Sequence record: MW021758.1
Direction: 5' to 3' (one strand)
DNA length: 64,000 nucleotides
Each line of letters begins with the position of its first letter. Position 1 is the first letter of the stretch. The notes beneath the pieces are model-generated. The model was not told the DNA's origin and did not search any database. It worked only from the letters and a program-made list of their open reading frames with translations. A program made the translations under genes and the position numbers. This document shows, piece after piece, positions 55,028-57,920 of this stretch.

Positions 55028-55504
55028 TTAAGGTTTCATACAGAAGTACTTAGTCTGTTCCGAGAAACCGTATCTCTTGTAAAACTTAATGGCTCGTTTA
55101 TTTCTTGACTTGACTGAAAGTGACAATTGATCTACTTGTTGGATCTTGGCAAAGTTCCTTACTTGATCAACTAGTGCAGATCCATATCCAAACCCTCTGT
55201 ACTCTCGTTGTACGTACAGATAACATATAGAAAGCCACTTAGAACTAGCGTTAACTACTGCGGTCGTGTACTCAACGAAACCTACAGGATTACCCCTCAC
55301 AAGGAGCATTAGTATTTGAGTATCGTCCACCCAACGTTCCTCTAAGGTTTTACACTCCATCTCACGACTAAGGATATCTAAGTTAGCTGACTCTTTCCAG
55401 TAAGTAGCTTCTCGTTTATCCATAATCTGGATCATCTTAAGAAGATCTGATTCGTAACCTTTAATTGCCGGATCTTTAGGATTCAATGCCAGTATGAATT
55501 TCAT
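55028..55504 (-). CDS. GNAT-family acetyltransferase
   Basis: LYVQREYRGFGYGSALVDQV and LSVKSRNKRAIKFYKRYGF. Confidence 0.85.
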   Translation of the reverse strand: MKFILALNPKDPAIKGYESDLLKMIQIMDKREATYWKESANLDILSREMECKTLEERWVDDTQILMLLVRGNPVGFVEYTTAVVNASSKWLSICYLYVQREYRGFGYGSALVDQVRNFAKIQQVDQLSLSVKSRNKRAIKFYKRYGFSEQTKYFCMKP

Positions 55505-55838: not shown

Positions 55839-56348
55839 TTAGTTAATCAGCCAAGTAACCGGATAACCTTTTACTTCTTTGGCCAACTTTCGGTAATACG
55901 CATTAAGATTAATCTTACTAGCAATCGTCGACGCGCCATCAAAGAAGACCGATGTGGCGTAGCGGTGACGTTCTAGGTCAGCGTTTAAGAATTCCCTGGC
56001 AGTGAAGCAACGATCGACTATATTGTCTTTGTCGCCATTAAGAATACCCCGTTCAACAGATGGTCCATATTTAAGACACTTGTCGAAAATGACTTTAGGG
56101 TATTTCTCAACATCCGCTAGGAAGTGTTCTTTAAAGTCGCTATTAATCAAAATTACAATTGAGTTACGATCCTCAATGAGTTTTTCGATAAGCCAATACG
56201 TAGACCCCGTTTGGCGAGGTGCCTTGAATCCTAGCGTATAAATTTCGGCTAACTCTTTTTCCCTGCTAAGCCCAAGACATGGGCCTGCATCAGGATCTAT
56301 TGAGTTTAAGAGTTCTTGCATGATCATATCGCGATTAAGGATAGTCAT
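55839..56348 (-). CDS. Small protein with a degenerate P-loop
   Basis: GFKAPRQTGST resembles terminase/helicase PRQxGK[T/S], and VFFDG is Walker-B-like. Confidence 0.6.
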   Translation of the reverse strand: MTILNRDMIMQELLNSIDPDAGPCLGLSREKELAEIYTLGFKAPRQTGSTYWLIEKLIEDRNSIVILINSDFKEHFLADVEKYPKVIFDKCLKYGPSVERGILNGDKDNIVDRCFTAREFLNADLERHRYATSVFFDGASTIASKINLNAYYRKLAKEVKGYPVTWLIN

Positions 56349-56383
56349 CGTAGAATCGTCCTATTAGTTTAACTTACTGGTTT

Positions 56384-56462
56384 TTAGGTACGCGGAATCC
56401 ATTCCACAAAGTCTTTAGGCAGCGGGCAGATGAATGCGGCCACTTGAGACTTACGTACCTAA
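56384..56462 (-). ncRNA. tRNA-sized three-way-junction RNA candidate
   Basis: 9-bp closing stem TTAGGTACG/CGTACCTAA, inner stem AAGTCT/AGACTT, and 3' hairpin GGAA-TGGA-TTCC. Confidence 0.45.
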
Positions 56463-56463
56463 T

Positions 56464-56590
56464 TGGGTGACGCCCCCAGGAATCGCACCTGGCTTTCCGG
56501 TGCTGTTGCCGCGATCTCGCCACAACAGTTGCTGGCACTTAGCCCCCACCGCGCCCAGCTGGCGCAGGCTGCTTTTTACGTGCAGGCGTC
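56464..56590 (-). ncRNA. tRNA-like RNA, copy 1 (acceptor stem + T arm + CCCA, ~90-nt structured insert)
   Basis: GACGCCT...CCAGG-TGCGATT-CCTGG-GGGCGTC-A-CCCA. Confidence 0.7.
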
Positions 56591-56700
56591 ATTGTTCTTT
56601 TAACCGACAAACAGAAGTTGTTTACCGATCAGTTTAACTTCCTCATGGTTTGGCTATCAAAAACCTTAAATAGTAGATAGCGATCTTCATGTTAGCTAAA

Positions 56701-56810
56701 TGGATTACACACCACAACACCCGATAGATGGTAAGTGGATCTCAGGTATGCGTTTAAGCCCTGACCTGTTGCACCCCGGTTGATTAACGTAGTGTGTAAT
56801 ATCGTACCCC
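56701..56810 (-). ncRNA. Candidate CCA-ended structured RNA
   Basis: TTACACAC/GTGTGTAA closing stem followed by T-CCA, with internal CAGGT/ACCTG. No clear T arm. Confidence 0.4.
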
Positions 56811-56892
56811 AGACATCTTCCGTTCTCAGGTAGTAACGGGGGCAGACCGCTATGATTAGTAGCAGTCATTTCACCGATCTCTTAGGATGTCT
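56811..56892 (-). ncRNA. Degenerate tRNA-like unit
   Basis: 7-bp AGACATC/GATGTCT. An 8-bp arm GACTGCTA/TAGCGGTC closes the 7-nt loop CTAATCA, and there is a CCGTT/AACGG arm. Confidence 0.45.
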
Positions 56893-56900
56893 ATTAACTA

Positions 56901-56986
56901 GATCGAGAGTAGGGATCGAACCTACGTAGTCTTACGGACGTATCCGCCGTCGAATTCCTCACTAGGTTTAAGTAGACTATCTCGAT
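56901..56986 (-). ncRNA. tRNA-like unit with a canonical T arm but no D/anticodon arms
   Basis: ATCGAGA/TCTCGAT acceptor, GTAGG-TTCGATC-CCTAC T arm, and inner stem TAGTCT/AGACTA. Confidence 0.55.
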
Positions 56987-56999
56987 AAAACGTTAAGAA

Positions 57000-57063
57000 G
57001 TCCTCACTGCAGATTCGTTTCACCACAGGTTGACTACAATCAACCTCCCTCTACAATGAGGAC
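57000..57063 (-). ncRNA. Candidate small structured RNA
   Basis: 14-bp stem GTCCTCATTGTAGA/TCTGCAGTGAGGAC (with G-U pairs) enclosing AGGTTGA/TCAACCT and a GGTGAAAC segment. Confidence 0.45.
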
Positions 57064-57067
57064 ATCA

Positions 57068-57193
57068 TGGGAGACACTCCTCCGAATTTCACGGAGTTAT
57101 AAAGGCTGCTCTAGCTAACCATTGGTCGCTATGTATTGGCTGCCAGTCCTCTTTTTCTGGGTGCAGTACCCAGGGCTTTGGGGGACAAGTGTC
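57068..57193 (-). ncRNA. tRNA-like RNA, copy 2
   Basis: GACACTT...CTCCG-TGAAATT-CGGAG-GAGTGTC-T-CCCA, with the same architecture and length as 56464-56590. Confidence 0.7.
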
Positions 57194-57287
57194 ATTGTTA
57201 TCGCACCCCAATTAACTGTATCTACCGTAACTTAAGTAGTAGGGAATTAAATGGGACGACTTTACCCGAACGTCTTCGGGCTTTGTT

Positions 57288-57366
57288 TGGGAACCTGAGG
57301 AAGGATTTGAACCTCCAACGGCCGTCTTAGCTGGACGGTGCTCTATTCAGTTGAGCTACTCGGTTC
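57288..57366 (-). tRNA. Atypical tRNA with a GCT anticodon (nominally Ser)
   Basis: Cloverleaf with D stem GCTC/GAGC, anticodon arm CCGTC-CAGCTAA-GACGG, T arm GGAGG-TTCAAAT-CCTTC and an encoded CCA. Several non-canonical features. Confidence 0.7.
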
Positions 57367-57373
57367 ATTGATT

Positions 57374-57458
57374 TGGTGGTAGGTGATGGACTCGAACCAT
57401 CGAAGCCCGAAGGCGACAGATTTACAGTCTGTTCTCGTTGCCGCTTGAGTAACCTACC
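57374..57458 (-). tRNA. trnY: tRNA-Tyr(GTA)
   Basis: GGTAGGT/ACCTACC acceptor, ACAGA-CTGTAAA-TCTGT, long variable arm, GATGG-TTCGAGT-CCATC, and A-CCA. Confidence 0.95.
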
Positions 57459-57472
57459 AGGAATTCGTCTTG

Positions 57473-57624
57473 ATTGGAGTAGGCGCGTAATGTCGCCTCG
57501 TGTTAGTTGCTCGCATCTATCATGCGCTACCTTTAAGGCATTCGAACCCTAAACCAACGCACTAGTGTGCGGAAGTTGTTCCACAACCCGGACGATTGAG
57601 ATCGTACCCTTAAAGCTCTCCAAT
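57473..57624 (-). ncRNA. Candidate ~150-nt multi-branched RNA
   Basis: Closing stem ATTGGAG/CTCCAAT, an 8-bp CTTTAAGG/CCTTAAAG helix, five hairpins and a GGTTCGAAT segment. Confidence 0.6.
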
Positions 57625-57761
57625 AGTTAGTGGGGATCCATCCCCGCTTGTAGCTGAATCTCACTTAGTTACCGACAATCGACCCTGGAGTTAATTGAAC
57701 TAAATGATTACTTGATGCAGCTTCTACATACTTAAACTTGTTGCGTAAAAAAAGATCTAAA

Positions 57762-57920
57762 TCAACGTTTTGCCAAGATCGCTTTCTTGTTCTTCTTACG
57801 CTTATCGGCGTTATGGAATTCTTTAGCAACCTTCTGGGGAATGCCTGCTTCTTCAGCGAACTCTTTGTCGTGGGCAGCGGCAGCCATGAATTGCTCTTGT
57901 TTCTTACTGGTACTAGGCAT
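57762..57920 (-). CDS. 52-aa basic protein missed by the ORF track
   Basis: AGAGGA RBS. MPSTSKKQEQFMAAAAHDKEFAEEAGIPQKVAKEFHNADKRKKNKKAILAKR resembles a small phage family I recall (MPS.SKKQ..FMAA.AH...FA...GIPQ.V.KEF). Confidence 0.75.
   Translation of the reverse strand: MPSTSKKQEQFMAAAAHDKEFAEEAGIPQKVAKEFHNADKRKKNKKAILAKR

What the first reader, a model, noticed from the sequence alone, without database searches (positions are those of the whole stretch)
56350..57735. 1.4-kb head-to-tail array of about 9 tRNA-sized structured units, only one a canonical tRNA
This stretch has no credible ORF. Almost every base falls in a unit whose 5' and 3' ends pair by 7-14 bp, and several units are separated by only 0-15 nt. 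Units: 57473-57624, tRNA-Tyr, atypical GCT tRNA, 57068-57193, 57000-57063, 56901-56986, 56811-56892, 56701-56810, 56464-56590 and 56384-56462. Several have an AAT immediately before the 5' end, and several end in or near CCA. The layout resembles a polycistronic tRNA operon in which most members are not tRNAs. Inference: a processed cassette of diverse small RNAs, possibly for anti-defence or translation control, rather than a tRNA graveyard. Decayed tRNAs should lose pairing, whereas these keep long stems.
Basis: partly seen in the sequence, partly recalled or inferred. Interest (0 to 1): 0.85.

Follow-up and report, generated by a model that had tools for sequence, protein, structure and literature searches.

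The report
Phage array of anticodon-less tRNA look-alikes
A Serratia jumbo phage carries, next to its one ordinary tRNA gene, a head-to-tail row of small RNA genes that keep the parts of a tRNA read by processing enzymes but lack a working anticodon; at least four kinds are conserved in unrelated phages, and one is a widespread structured RNA that has no Rfam family.

Summary
The window is Serratia jumbo phage Yaphecito/Moabite. The stretch is a minus-strand, tRNA-operon-like row of ten units between two minus-strand ORFs. Only tRNA-Tyr is canonical. The "Ser(GCU)" tRNA is class I with a non-U at position 33.

Thermodynamics does not single the array out: unbiased sliding windows fold no better than the flanks. 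Terminal pairing is about 2.7 times chance only when G-U pairs are excluded. Comparative evidence is the stronger support.
- U1 belongs to a phage-specific RNA class with one match in each of 39 loci searched (79 distinct sites hold its core motif). Covariation is strong (99.7% of cells paired against 78.8% shuffled). It has no Rfam match and lies co-oriented in tRNA arrays.
- U4 and U9 are enlarged tRNA-like RNAs found in Erwinia and Salmonella jumbo phages.
- U6 is a cloverleaf with a tetraloop in place of the anticodon loop, also found in about 75 T4-like Klebsiella phages.
- U8 occurs in two other jumbo phages.

Against the most divergent relative, the units are 94-99% identical and the flanking genes 69-79%. 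Units are swapped, gained and lost as cassettes, and some decay is real.

Verdict: a cassette of functional non-decoding tRNA mimics, analogous to T4 species 1 and 2 RNAs. Processing and function are inferred, not shown.

The parts
57625..57761 (-). Leader between ORF 57762-57920 and the first unit. It includes a conserved hairpin at about 57632-57649.
   Evidence: Sequence. 100% identical in five relatives and 90% in Totoro. No sigma-70-like promoter was found on the minus strand here.
57473..57624 (-). U1: member of a widespread phage RNA class (core 57476-57621). Helix P1 closes the 5' and 3' ends. Helix P2 encloses a tRNA-like insert. Hairpins P3 and P4 flank an invariant 13-nt single strand.
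   Evidence: Covariance model R1 scores 105.9 bits, E = 1e-27, and finds this single copy in the window. The T-arm of the insert carries a 12-nt deletion relative to five relatives. No Rfam family matches.
57374..57458 (-). tRNA-Tyr(GUA), the only canonical tRNA, with an encoded CCA.
   Evidence: ARAGORN. Rfam tRNA at 52.9 bits. Replaced, damaged or cut off in Haymo, Kodama and Totoro.
57288..57366 (-). Atypical 'tRNA-Ser(GCU)'. It has a short variable region, A at position 33 and acceptor mismatches, so it is probably not a normal serine tRNA.
   Evidence: Rfam 37.4 bits with two non-standard acceptor pairs. Position 33 is A, C or U among relatives, and the T-stem shows compensatory changes. 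Related Erwinia phages carry a 90-92 nt class II Ser(GCU) tRNA instead.
57194..57287 (-). Spacer S1: two hairpins, specific to the lineage.
   Evidence: Fold z = -3.45. Replaced by different sequence in the 2050HW-type relatives.
57068..57193 (-). U4: enlarged tRNA-like RNA of 121 nt plus a UCCCA tail. It has a 7-bp acceptor, a 4-bp D-like stem, a large insert, and a 5-bp T-like arm with loop UGAAAUU. It is preceded by ACAAU.
   Evidence: Homologs in Kwan/Wellington, phiEaH2, pEa_SNUABM_29, 2050HW and IMG/VR contigs. The D-like stem has six different pairing versions and the T-like stem shows a compensatory change. Fold z = -3.1.
57000..57063 (-). U5: 64-nt hairpin with a 14-bp closing stem and no tRNA features. 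Found only in this genus.
   Evidence: Fold z = -6.3. The three substitutions in its stems (two in the closing stem, one in the inner hairpin) keep pairing in relatives. 94% identical in Totoro.
56901..56986 (-). U6: anticodon-less cloverleaf. It has a 7-bp acceptor, a D-like stem with a conserved 21-23 nt loop, a stem capped by a UACG tetraloop where the anticodon loop would be, and a canonical T-arm.
   Evidence: Homologs in about 75 T4-like Klebsiella, Citrobacter, Enterobacter and Salmonella phages, in N1M2 and in Shewanella SXP01. The Rfam tRNA model aligns the SXP01 copy at 28.3 bits against a threshold of 29. The stems covary.
56811..56892 (-). U7: 82-nt unit with a 7-bp closing stem. 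Present only in Moabite and Yaphecito.
   Evidence: Fold z = -2.6. Lies in the 293-nt block that the five other Moabiteviruses lack. No homolog found elsewhere.
56701..56810 (-). U8: conserved RNA with a 13-bp closing stem followed by CCA (core 56704-56800).
   Evidence: Homologs in Klebsiella jumbo phage N1M2, directly after its tRNA-Asn, and in Erwinia phage AH04. Both show compensatory changes. Fold z = 0.0.
56591..56700 (-). Spacer S2: hairpins. A weak match to Shewanella phage SXP01.
   Evidence: 76% identity over 67 nt. Part of the block specific to Moabite and Yaphecito.
56464..56590 (-). U9: paralog-like second member of the U4 class, 122 nt plus an ACCCA tail. It has the same ACAAU leader, a 7-bp acceptor, a T-like arm with loop UGCGAUU and a GCAGCC motif.
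   Evidence: 98% identical in Totoro. A block of its interior is replaced in the 2050HW group.
56384..56462 (-). U10: 79-nt unit with a 7-8 bp closing stem stacked on a 6-bp hairpin. Found only in this genus.
   Evidence: Fold z = -3.0. 95-100% identical in relatives. BUCT660 has a 14-nt duplication inside it.
55839..56348 (-). Downstream neighbour: 169-aa ORF of unknown function. It starts 35 nt after U10 with no terminator in between.
57762..57920 (-). Upstream neighbour: 52-aa ORF of unknown function.

Best explanation
The stretch is a minus-strand, tRNA-operon-like cluster of ten small-RNA genes. One is an ordinary tRNA-Tyr. The others are tRNA derivatives or mimics that cannot decode.

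They keep what tRNA-handling enzymes read: a terminal coaxial helix of 12-14 bp, often a T-arm-like hairpin next to the 3' strand, U at -1, short spacers, and sometimes an NCCA-like tail. The anticodon arm is replaced by a tetraloop, a large insert or another domain.

At least four kinds are independent, conserved gene families that move between phages as cassettes (U1 class, U4/U9 class, U6 class, U8 class).

Inferred, not shown: the row is transcribed as one precursor and cut by host RNase P and the 3'-end tRNA nucleases, as for the T4 precursor of eight tRNAs plus species 1 and 2 RNAs.

Inferred with low confidence: the mature RNAs act as non-decoding tRNA mimics that occupy or titrate tRNA-binding factors, either host tRNA-directed nucleases, modification or charging enzymes, or phage factors. 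The U1-class core, whose junction is invariant, has a separate biochemical role of its own.
For: - Identity and strand.
- U1 class: one copy in each of 39 loci, including loci left out of the model. 99.7% of cells are paired against 78.8% in shuffles and 31-51% when partners are slid; 131 cells changed on both sides against 40 expected. There are 79 distinct loci, 56 with tRNAs within 3 kb, and all 510 of those tRNAs are co-oriented. The motif matched 32 IMG/VR viral contigs and 60 metagenome contigs but only 3 of 185,579 species genomes.
- U4/U9 class: six pairing versions of the D-like stem and a compensatory change in the T-like stem.
- U6 class: four acceptor versions, three or four T-stem versions, and a compensatory change in the tetraloop stem.
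- U8 class: compensatory changes in three phages.
- Conservation against Totoro: U1 99.3%, U6 98.8%, U9 98.4%, U10 94.9%, U5 93.8%. Flanking ORFs are 69-79%.
- Cassette behaviour: the U7-U8-S2 block is present only in Moabite and Yaphecito; U4 and S1 are swapped; the Tyr slot is swapped; Totoro has an HNH gene insertion.
- U at -1 in 10 of 10 units.
- Precedent: T4 rnaC and rnaD lie in the tRNA cluster. PMC2330249 describes one precursor for eight tRNAs plus species I and II RNAs, and a homing endonuclease in that cluster.
Against: - No expression, end-mapping or modification data exist for this phage, so processing and stability are untested.
- Unbiased folding-energy windows do not distinguish the array from flanking coding DNA.
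- U5, U7, U10, S1 and S2 have no homolog outside the genus.
- Decay is visible: a 12-nt deletion in the T-arm of the U1 insert in this phage, and a 14-nt duplication in U10 of BUCT660.
- High identity to Totoro could partly reflect recent recombination rather than selection.
- The invariant P4 and junction letters of the U1 class are partly fixed by the search pattern that collected the metagenomic members.
- No partner protein or target was found.
Confidence: 0.7

Rival explanations
1. tRNA graveyard. The units are decaying remnants of a once larger tRNA cluster, like the 8-14 tRNA arrays of related Erwinia jumbo phages, and the remaining stems are inertia.
For: - Relatives carry many more true tRNAs at the equivalent locus.
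- Several units keep acceptor and T-arm remnants.
- Indels hit tRNA-like parts: the 12-nt T-arm deletion in U1, the 8-nt anticodon-loop deletion in Haymo, and the tRNA cut off by the HNH gene in Totoro.
- Five parts have no homolog outside the genus.
Against: - U1, U4, U6 and U8 are conserved across genera and families in their non-tRNA form, with compensatory changes.
- The non-tRNA parts are the best conserved: the 21-23 nt loop of U6 and the U1 junction.
- The units are 94-99% identical to Totoro where coding flanks are 69-79%.
Confidence: 0.12
2. Cis-acting untranslated region. The hairpins are terminators, RNase III or RNase E processing sites, or stabilisers for the flanking mRNAs, not separate RNA genes.
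For: There is no terminator between U10 and the downstream ORF, so the two may be co-transcribed. U5 is a long regular hairpin of the kind RNase III cuts (the RNase III link is inference).
Against: The conserved classes occur in other phages next to different genes or inside tRNA arrays, and no flanking gene is conserved with them. 1.4 kb is far more than such signals need.
Confidence: 0.06
3. One large structured RNA, of the GOLLD or ROOL kind that sits beside phage tRNAs.
For: The region is long, free of convincing ORFs, rich in structure and next to tRNAs.
Against: Rfam finds no match to any large RNA family. The units are gained, lost and swapped independently among close relatives and have separate distributions. 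No long-range pairing joins the units.
Confidence: 0.03
4. Small proteins. The 40-67 aa ORFs annotated in GenBank Moabite are the real products.
For: Four CDSs with ribosome-binding sites are annotated inside the array in Moabite.
Against: Most relatives annotate none of them. A 1-nt indel in the 2050HW group falls in the plus-strand ORF that spans U9. The variation is by paired compensatory changes, not by codon position. One of these ORFs is on the strand opposite to the tRNAs.
Confidence: 0.03

Closest known systems
Phage T4 species 1 and 2 stable RNAs (rnaC, rnaD) in the T4 tRNA cluster
   Same: They are non-tRNA stable RNAs of 119-139 nt encoded head to tail with tRNAs on one strand. rnaC ends in a T-arm plus an acceptor-like 3' end. 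They are made from the same precursor as the eight tRNAs, and a homing endonuclease gene lies in that cluster (PMC2330249). Their function is still unknown (my own knowledge).
   Different: No sequence similarity to any unit here: best blastn E = 1.1, and model R1 finds nothing in the T4 locus. T4 has 2 such RNAs beside 8 tRNAs; here there are 8 beside 1-2 tRNAs.
Canonical phage tRNA gene clusters (Rfam RF00005)
   Same: Same strand, spacing and U at -1. Acceptor and T-arm geometry is kept in U4, U6 and U9. The location is syntenic with the tRNA arrays of Erwinia jumbo phages.
   Different: Only two units pass the tRNA model. The others lack a 7-nt anticodon loop or carry inserts of 40-90 nt.
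Bacterial and phage Y RNA-like YrlA (Rfam RF02553; PMC4201824)
   Same: U1 has the same general plan: a stem formed by the 5' and 3' ends plus an internal tRNA-like domain.
   Different: The YrlA model does not match U1 or its relatives. It hits only across tandem tRNAs, at 23-29 bits against a threshold of 69. YrlA genes lie next to a Ro60 (TROVE-domain) gene. No conserved protein neighbour exists here. The conserved U1 core has two extra hairpins and an invariant 13-nt strand.
tRNA-like minihelix mimics such as the tmRNA tRNA-like domain and mascRNA (Rfam RF01684)
   Same: U4, U9 and U6 keep an acceptor plus T-arm stack with other domains in place of the anticodon arm. The insert of U1 in relatives gives sub-threshold mascRNA hits of 30.1 bits.
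   Different: ARAGORN finds no tmRNA. The mascRNA hits are below the threshold of 42.5. There is no tag reading frame.
GOLLD and ROOL large RNAs, and HDV-like (theta) ribozymes found beside phage tRNAs
   Same: They are phage-borne structured RNAs associated with tRNA genes (my own knowledge).
   Different: No Rfam match at E <= 10. The units are small and modular. The U1 core pairs across a tRNA insert, which does not fit a self-contained HDV-like fold.

Membership tests
tRNA (RF00005) | Scores above the curated threshold of 29 bits with a complete cloverleaf | tested here: not met
   Only 57377-57458 (52.9 bits) and 57292-57365 (37.4 bits) pass. No other unit is reported at E <= 10. The SXP01 homolog of U6 reaches 28.3 bits.
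tRNA (RF00005) | 7-nt anticodon loop with U33 | tested here: not met
   U6 has a 4-nt UACG loop. U4 and U9 have large inserts. The Ser(GCU)-like unit has A33. The tRNA inside the phiEa21-4 member of the U1 class has a 6-nt loop.
tRNA (RF00005) | 7-bp acceptor stem stacked on a 5-bp T-stem with a T-loop | tested here: met
   Met for U4, U6 and U9. Not met for U5, U7, U8 and U10.
T4-type stable RNAs of a phage tRNA operon (rnaC, rnaD) | Non-tRNA RNA gene head to tail with tRNAs on the same strand | tested here: met
T4-type stable RNAs of a phage tRNA operon (rnaC, rnaD) | Sequence homology to rnaC or rnaD | tested here: not met
   Best blastn E = 1.1.
T4-type stable RNAs of a phage tRNA operon (rnaC, rnaD) | Excised from a common precursor and stable in infected cells | not testable with these tools
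   No transcriptome data were available for Moabiteviruses.
YrlA / Y RNA (RF02553) | Match to the covariance model at 69 bits or more | tested here: not met
   No hit on U1 or on its homologs. The 23-29 bit hits span tandem tRNAs.
YrlA / Y RNA (RF02553) | Encoded beside a Ro60 (TROVE-domain) gene | tested here: inconclusive
   No recurrent protein neighbour in 79 loci. The flanking ORFs have no Pfam family. The whole phage genome was not screened.
tmRNA | tRNA-like ends plus a tag reading frame | tested here: not met
   ARAGORN reports no tmRNA in the window.
GOLLD, ROOL and other large Rfam RNAs | Match to the covariance model | tested here: not met
   No match at the gathering score or at E <= 10.
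U1 class (defined here, model R1) | P1, P2 and P3 helices with covariation, and the invariant strand and P4 hairpin | tested here: met
   Window copy scores 105.9 bits.

The most novel reading that the evidence does not exclude
The U1 class is a previously undescribed, phage-specific structured RNA. Its 80-nt cloverleaf-like core has an invariant four-helix junction, and one arm can carry a whole tRNA or tRNA-like domain. It has a biochemical activity of its own, such as ligand or protein capture or catalysis, that serves phages with tRNA arrays across many bacterial phyla. The array as a whole shows that phages maintain a repertoire of anticodon-less tRNA mimics as a general counter-measure or regulator aimed at tRNA-handling machinery.
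Probability: 0.3. Interest if true: 0.85.

Novelty: new variant of a known kind. Interest (0 to 1): 0.7.

Why it matters
Phage tRNA clusters are usually annotated tRNA by tRNA, and the gaps between tRNAs are ignored. In this case the gaps hold conserved RNA genes.
- One family has 79 distinct sites and strong covariation, has no Rfam family, and no paper was found that quotes its core motif.
- Another lies unannotated in about 75 sequenced T4-like Klebsiella phages that are being studied for therapy.

The function of the analogous T4 species 1 and 2 RNAs has been open for about fifty years. The families found here are conserved widely enough to give comparative handles on that question. If these RNAs are mimics that engage tRNA-directed host factors, they would be RNA-level players in a field so far described through proteins and true tRNAs.

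Tried and rejected
- Rfam at permissive thresholds on the window and on 11 related loci gave only tRNA hits and sub-threshold mascRNA, YrlA and miRNA noise.
- ARAGORN with lowered thresholds and intron mode gave only implausible calls.
- Folding energy as a discriminator was rejected: sliding windows show no difference from the flanks (a first attempt timed out).
- Terminal-pair tiling shows only a modest excess, and that excess depends on excluding G-U pairs.
- The search for a partner protein next to U1-class genes found only antisense pseudo-ORFs over tRNAs, which cluster artificially. The two 121-aa upstream ORFs of Felix-O1-like and Aioli-like phages are unrelated.
- The U1 core has no match in complete E. 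coli genomes.
- Literature searches for the motif letters, for phage tRNA-array RNAs and for jumbo-phage noncoding RNAs found no description. A catalogue of 10,006 candidate viral structured RNAs (PMC10690425) may contain these families, but I could not check that.
- RNAalifold on a MAFFT alignment of U6 was misled by a register shift, so I counted its stems by anchoring on the T-loop instead.
- T4 rnaC and rnaD are not homologous to any unit.

I stopped when I noticed. None of those letters went into a tool call, a note or this report, and no conclusion rests on them.
Full report
SOURCE AND LAYOUT

The 1.5 kb around the finding is 100% identical to Serratia phage vB_SmaM_Yaphecito and 99.9% identical to Serratia phage Moabite. 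Both are about 275 kb, genus Moabitevirus, and related to phiKZ. The stretch 56349-57761 lies between two minus-strand ORFs (55839-56348 and 57762-57920). ARAGORN and Rfam find two tRNAs, both on the minus strand: Tyr(GUA) at 57374-57458 (52.9 bits) and an atypical Ser(GCU)-like at 57288-57366 (37.4 bits). The array must therefore be read on the minus strand, from 57761 down to 56349.

CHECK OF THE OBSERVATION

The spacers between units are 7-17 nt, except for two stretches of about 100 nt (S1 at 57194-57287 and S2 at 56591-56700) and a 137-nt leader. The units therefore cover about 71% of the stretch. All ten units have U at -1. Five are preceded by AAU and seven by RAU. U is 25% of this strand, so ten of ten is unlikely by composition.

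Chance controls temper the rest of the observation.
- Units closed by seven Watson-Crick pairs are 2.7-fold enriched: 22 against 8.1 +/- 3.6 in shuffles and 7.8 +/- 2.4 in other parts of the window.
- Allowing one G-U pair removes the excess.
- Unit-aligned folds have z of about -2 to -3. The two true tRNAs score -2.2, U5 scores -6.3, and U6 and U8 score -0.8 and 0.0.
- Unbiased 120-nt sliding windows do not separate the array from flanking coding DNA: mean z is -0.91 against -0.87, p = 0.33.

COMPARATIVE EVIDENCE WITHIN THE GENUS

I aligned seven Moabitevirus arrays and computed per-segment identities. Two results follow.

First, against Totoro, the most divergent member, the flanking ORFs are 69-79% identical. 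The units are much closer: U1 99.3%, U6 98.8%, U9 98.4%, U10 94.9%, U5 93.8% and the Ser-like tRNA 90.7%.

Second, against near-identical relatives (flanks 98-100% identical) the array is a mosaic.
- A 293-nt block (U7, U8, S2) exists only in Moabite and Yaphecito.
- S1 and U4 are replaced by a different version of the same class.
- The tRNA-Tyr slot holds a different Tyr gene in Kodama. Haymo has a copy with an 8-nt anticodon-loop deletion. Totoro has a truncated copy followed by an HNH nuclease gene.

The units therefore behave as exchangeable cassettes under constraint, with some real decay. One example is in this phage: the tRNA-like insert of U1 has lost 12 nt of its T-arm.

U1 IS A MEMBER OF A WIDESPREAD RNA CLASS

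blastn with U1 hit 51 phage records from unrelated groups:
- Felix-O1-like Ounavirinae;
- the T5-like phages KEY and AAS21;
- Chaseviridae;
- Pectobacterium phage CBB;
- Erwinia jumbo phages.

A 29-nt pattern taken from the conserved 3' part found 32 IMG/VR contigs and 60 metagenome contigs, but only 3 of 185,579 species genomes.

The common architecture is as follows.
- A 4-bp helix P1 joins the 5' and 3' ends. Its first pair is C-G in 18 sequences, A-U in 13 and G-C in 4.
- An 8-10 bp helix P2 follows. Its loop is a variable insert.
- Next come a short hairpin P3 (often with a GNRA loop), an invariant 13-nt single strand, and hairpin P4.

The insert ranges from 10 nt in the 80-nt minimal member (L033 5922-6001) to a complete tRNA. 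The phiEa21-4 insert scores 50.2 bits as a tRNA but has a 6-nt anticodon loop. ARAGORN calls tRNA-Leu in KEY and tRNA-Val in a CBB-like contig.

A covariance model built from 26 members finds exactly one full-length copy in each of 39 loci, including members left out of the model. It finds one copy in the window, at 57476-57621 (105.9 bits). On that alignment:
- 99.7% of cells are standard pairs, against 78.8% after shuffling and 31-51% with slid partners;
- 131 cells changed on both sides, against 40 expected;
- six of eight P2 pairs and all three P3 pairs covary.

P4 and the single strand are invariant. This is partly forced by the search pattern, but the blastn-derived members share them too.

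Of 79 distinct loci, 56 have tRNAs within 3 kb, and all 510 of those tRNAs are on the same strand as the RNA. No protein gene recurs beside it. No Rfam family matches it. I found no paper that quotes its core motif.

THE OTHER CONSERVED CLASSES

U4 (121 nt) and U9 (122 nt) share one plan:
- an ACAAU leader;
- a 7-bp acceptor-like stem;
- a 5-bp arm with a T-loop-like UGNNAUU loop directly before the 3' strand;
- a GCAGCC motif;
- an N-CCCA tail.

U4 homologs occur in Erwinia phages Kwan, Wellington, phiEaH2 and pEa_SNUABM_29, in the other Moabiteviruses, and in IMG/VR contigs. In Kwan the homolog lies directly after tRNA-Ser(GCU). A 4-5 bp stem just after the acceptor strand has six different pairing versions in six sequences. 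The T-like stem changes CUCCG/CGGAG to CUCAG/CUGAG. The interior is highly variable.

U6 (85 nt) has homologs in about 75 T4-like Klebsiella, Enterobacter, Citrobacter and Salmonella phages, in Klebsiella jumbo phage N1M2, and in Shewanella phage SXP01. In all of these it is unannotated and lies inside or beside tRNA clusters. The Rfam tRNA model aligns the SXP01 copy end to end at 28.3 bits. It assigns a 23-nt D-loop and only a tetraloop where the anticodon loop should be. The acceptor has four versions and the T-stem three or four. The tetraloop stem changes CGGA/UCCG to CAGA/UCUG. A 4-bp stem changes GUCU/AGAC to GUUG/CAAC. The 21-23 nt loop sequence is almost invariant.

U8 has homologs in N1M2 (directly after its tRNA-Asn) and in Erwinia phage AH04. 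There are compensatory changes in the 13-bp closing stem and in an inner stem.

U5, U7, U10, S1 and S2 have no convincing homolog outside the genus. Within the genus, the three stem substitutions in U5 keep pairing.

THE SER(GCU)-LIKE tRNA

This unit has a short variable region, whereas bacterial serine tRNAs are class II with a long arm (established knowledge). Related Erwinia phages do carry a 90-92 nt Ser(GCU) tRNA. Position 33 is A here, and C or U in relatives. The T-stem is kept by compensatory changes. The unit is constrained but probably not a normal serine acceptor.

HOW IT MOST LIKELY WORKS

Shown by the data:
- ten co-oriented units with short spacers and U at -1;
- terminal helices of 12-14 bp (7+5 in U4, U6 and U9; 7+6 in U10; 13 in U8; 14 in U5; P1+P2 in U1);
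- conservation with covariation for four classes;
- cassette exchange.

From established knowledge: bacterial RNase P, the 3'-end tRNA nucleases and the CCA-adding enzyme recognise the acceptor/T-arm stack rather than the anticodon, and RNase P prefers U at -1. T4 makes its eight tRNAs and its species 1 and 2 RNAs from one precursor (PMC2330249).

Inference: the array is one precursor that the host tRNA-processing enzymes cut into separate stable RNAs.

Further inference, with low confidence: since the units cannot decode, they act as tRNA mimics that bind or titrate tRNA-handling factors. The invariant junction of the U1 core suggests that it binds a universal partner or ligand, or has catalytic activity. 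I found no evidence that identifies the partner.

RIVAL EXPLANATIONS

A pure graveyard is contradicted by the cross-family conservation of exactly the non-tRNA parts. A cis-acting untranslated region, a single large RNA and small proteins each fail on distribution, modularity or the pattern of variation. Details are in the rival entries.

COMPARISON WITH KNOWN SYSTEMS

The closest analogue is the pair of T4 stable RNAs, rnaC and rnaD. They are analogous in place and plan but not homologous: best E = 1.1, and no hit with model R1. YrlA Y RNAs share the plan of a closing stem plus a tRNA-like domain. However, the model does not match, and no Ro60 gene accompanies these RNAs. tmRNA, GOLLD, ROOL and ribozyme families are excluded by ARAGORN and Rfam.

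NOVELTY AND SCORE

The kind of element is known, namely stable non-tRNA RNAs in a phage tRNA operon and tRNA mimics. The following appear not to have been described:
- this array, dominated by eight such RNAs;
- the recognition of four families shared across phage families;
- the U1 class, with its strong covariation and invariant core.

I rate it a new variant of a known kind, interest 0.7. I give a 0.3 chance that the U1 class is a new functional RNA class with its own biochemistry.

Noticed in passing
L003 (Serratia phage Totoro) 2229-2834: An HNH nuclease gene occupies the tRNA-Tyr slot of the array, and the 3' half of that tRNA is gone. This resembles the SegB homing endonuclease in the T4 tRNA cluster.
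   Followed up: partly
L005 (Haymo) 2238-2317; L006 (Kodama) between 2233 and 2344: Haymo's Tyr-type tRNA has an 8-nt deletion in the anticodon loop. GenBank calls it tRNA-Asn and ARAGORN calls it tRNA-???. Kodama has an extra unit of about 105 nt, tRNA-like with an oversized anticodon loop.
   Followed up: partly
window 57330 region (position 33 of the Ser(GCU)-like tRNA): The nucleotide 5' of the anticodon is A, C or U in different Moabiteviruses. U is nearly universal at this position in decoding tRNAs.
   Followed up: no
L004 (BUCT660), homolog of window 56384-56462: There is a 14-nt tandem duplication inside U10.
   Followed up: no
L008 (Shewanella phage SXP01) 2603-5008: A 2.4-kb stretch has no annotated gene. 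It holds three tRNAs, a U6 homolog and a piece similar to S2, so it is probably another array of this kind.
   Followed up: partly
L018 (Klebsiella phage JD18) 1676-2602; L020 (Citrobacter phage CF1) 1360-1955: T4-like phages have unannotated gaps of 600-900 nt in or near their tRNA clusters, and these gaps contain the U6-class RNA.
   Followed up: partly
window 55028-55504 (-): A GNAT acetyltransferase gene (Pfam Acetyltransf_1, E = 5e-16) lies two genes downstream of the array and is co-oriented with it. It appears truncated in 2050HW and ParM-25. Some GNAT enzymes acetylate charged tRNAs (my own knowledge), but nothing links this one to the array.
   Followed up: partly
L077 and L092 (metagenome contig Ga0209310_1000059, 217 kb): One large contig carries two copies of the U1-class RNA.
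   Followed up: no
L027 and L043 (Erwinia Ounavirinae): A 73-nt tRNA-sized unit has the unusual T-loop UGGGAUU, the same loop type as in the U4 class.
   Followed up: no
L010 (Erwinia phage pEa_SNUABM_29) 2666-2949: A U4-class RNA is followed 13 nt later by a U1-class RNA. The same families therefore occur in a different order in another genus.
   Followed up: partly
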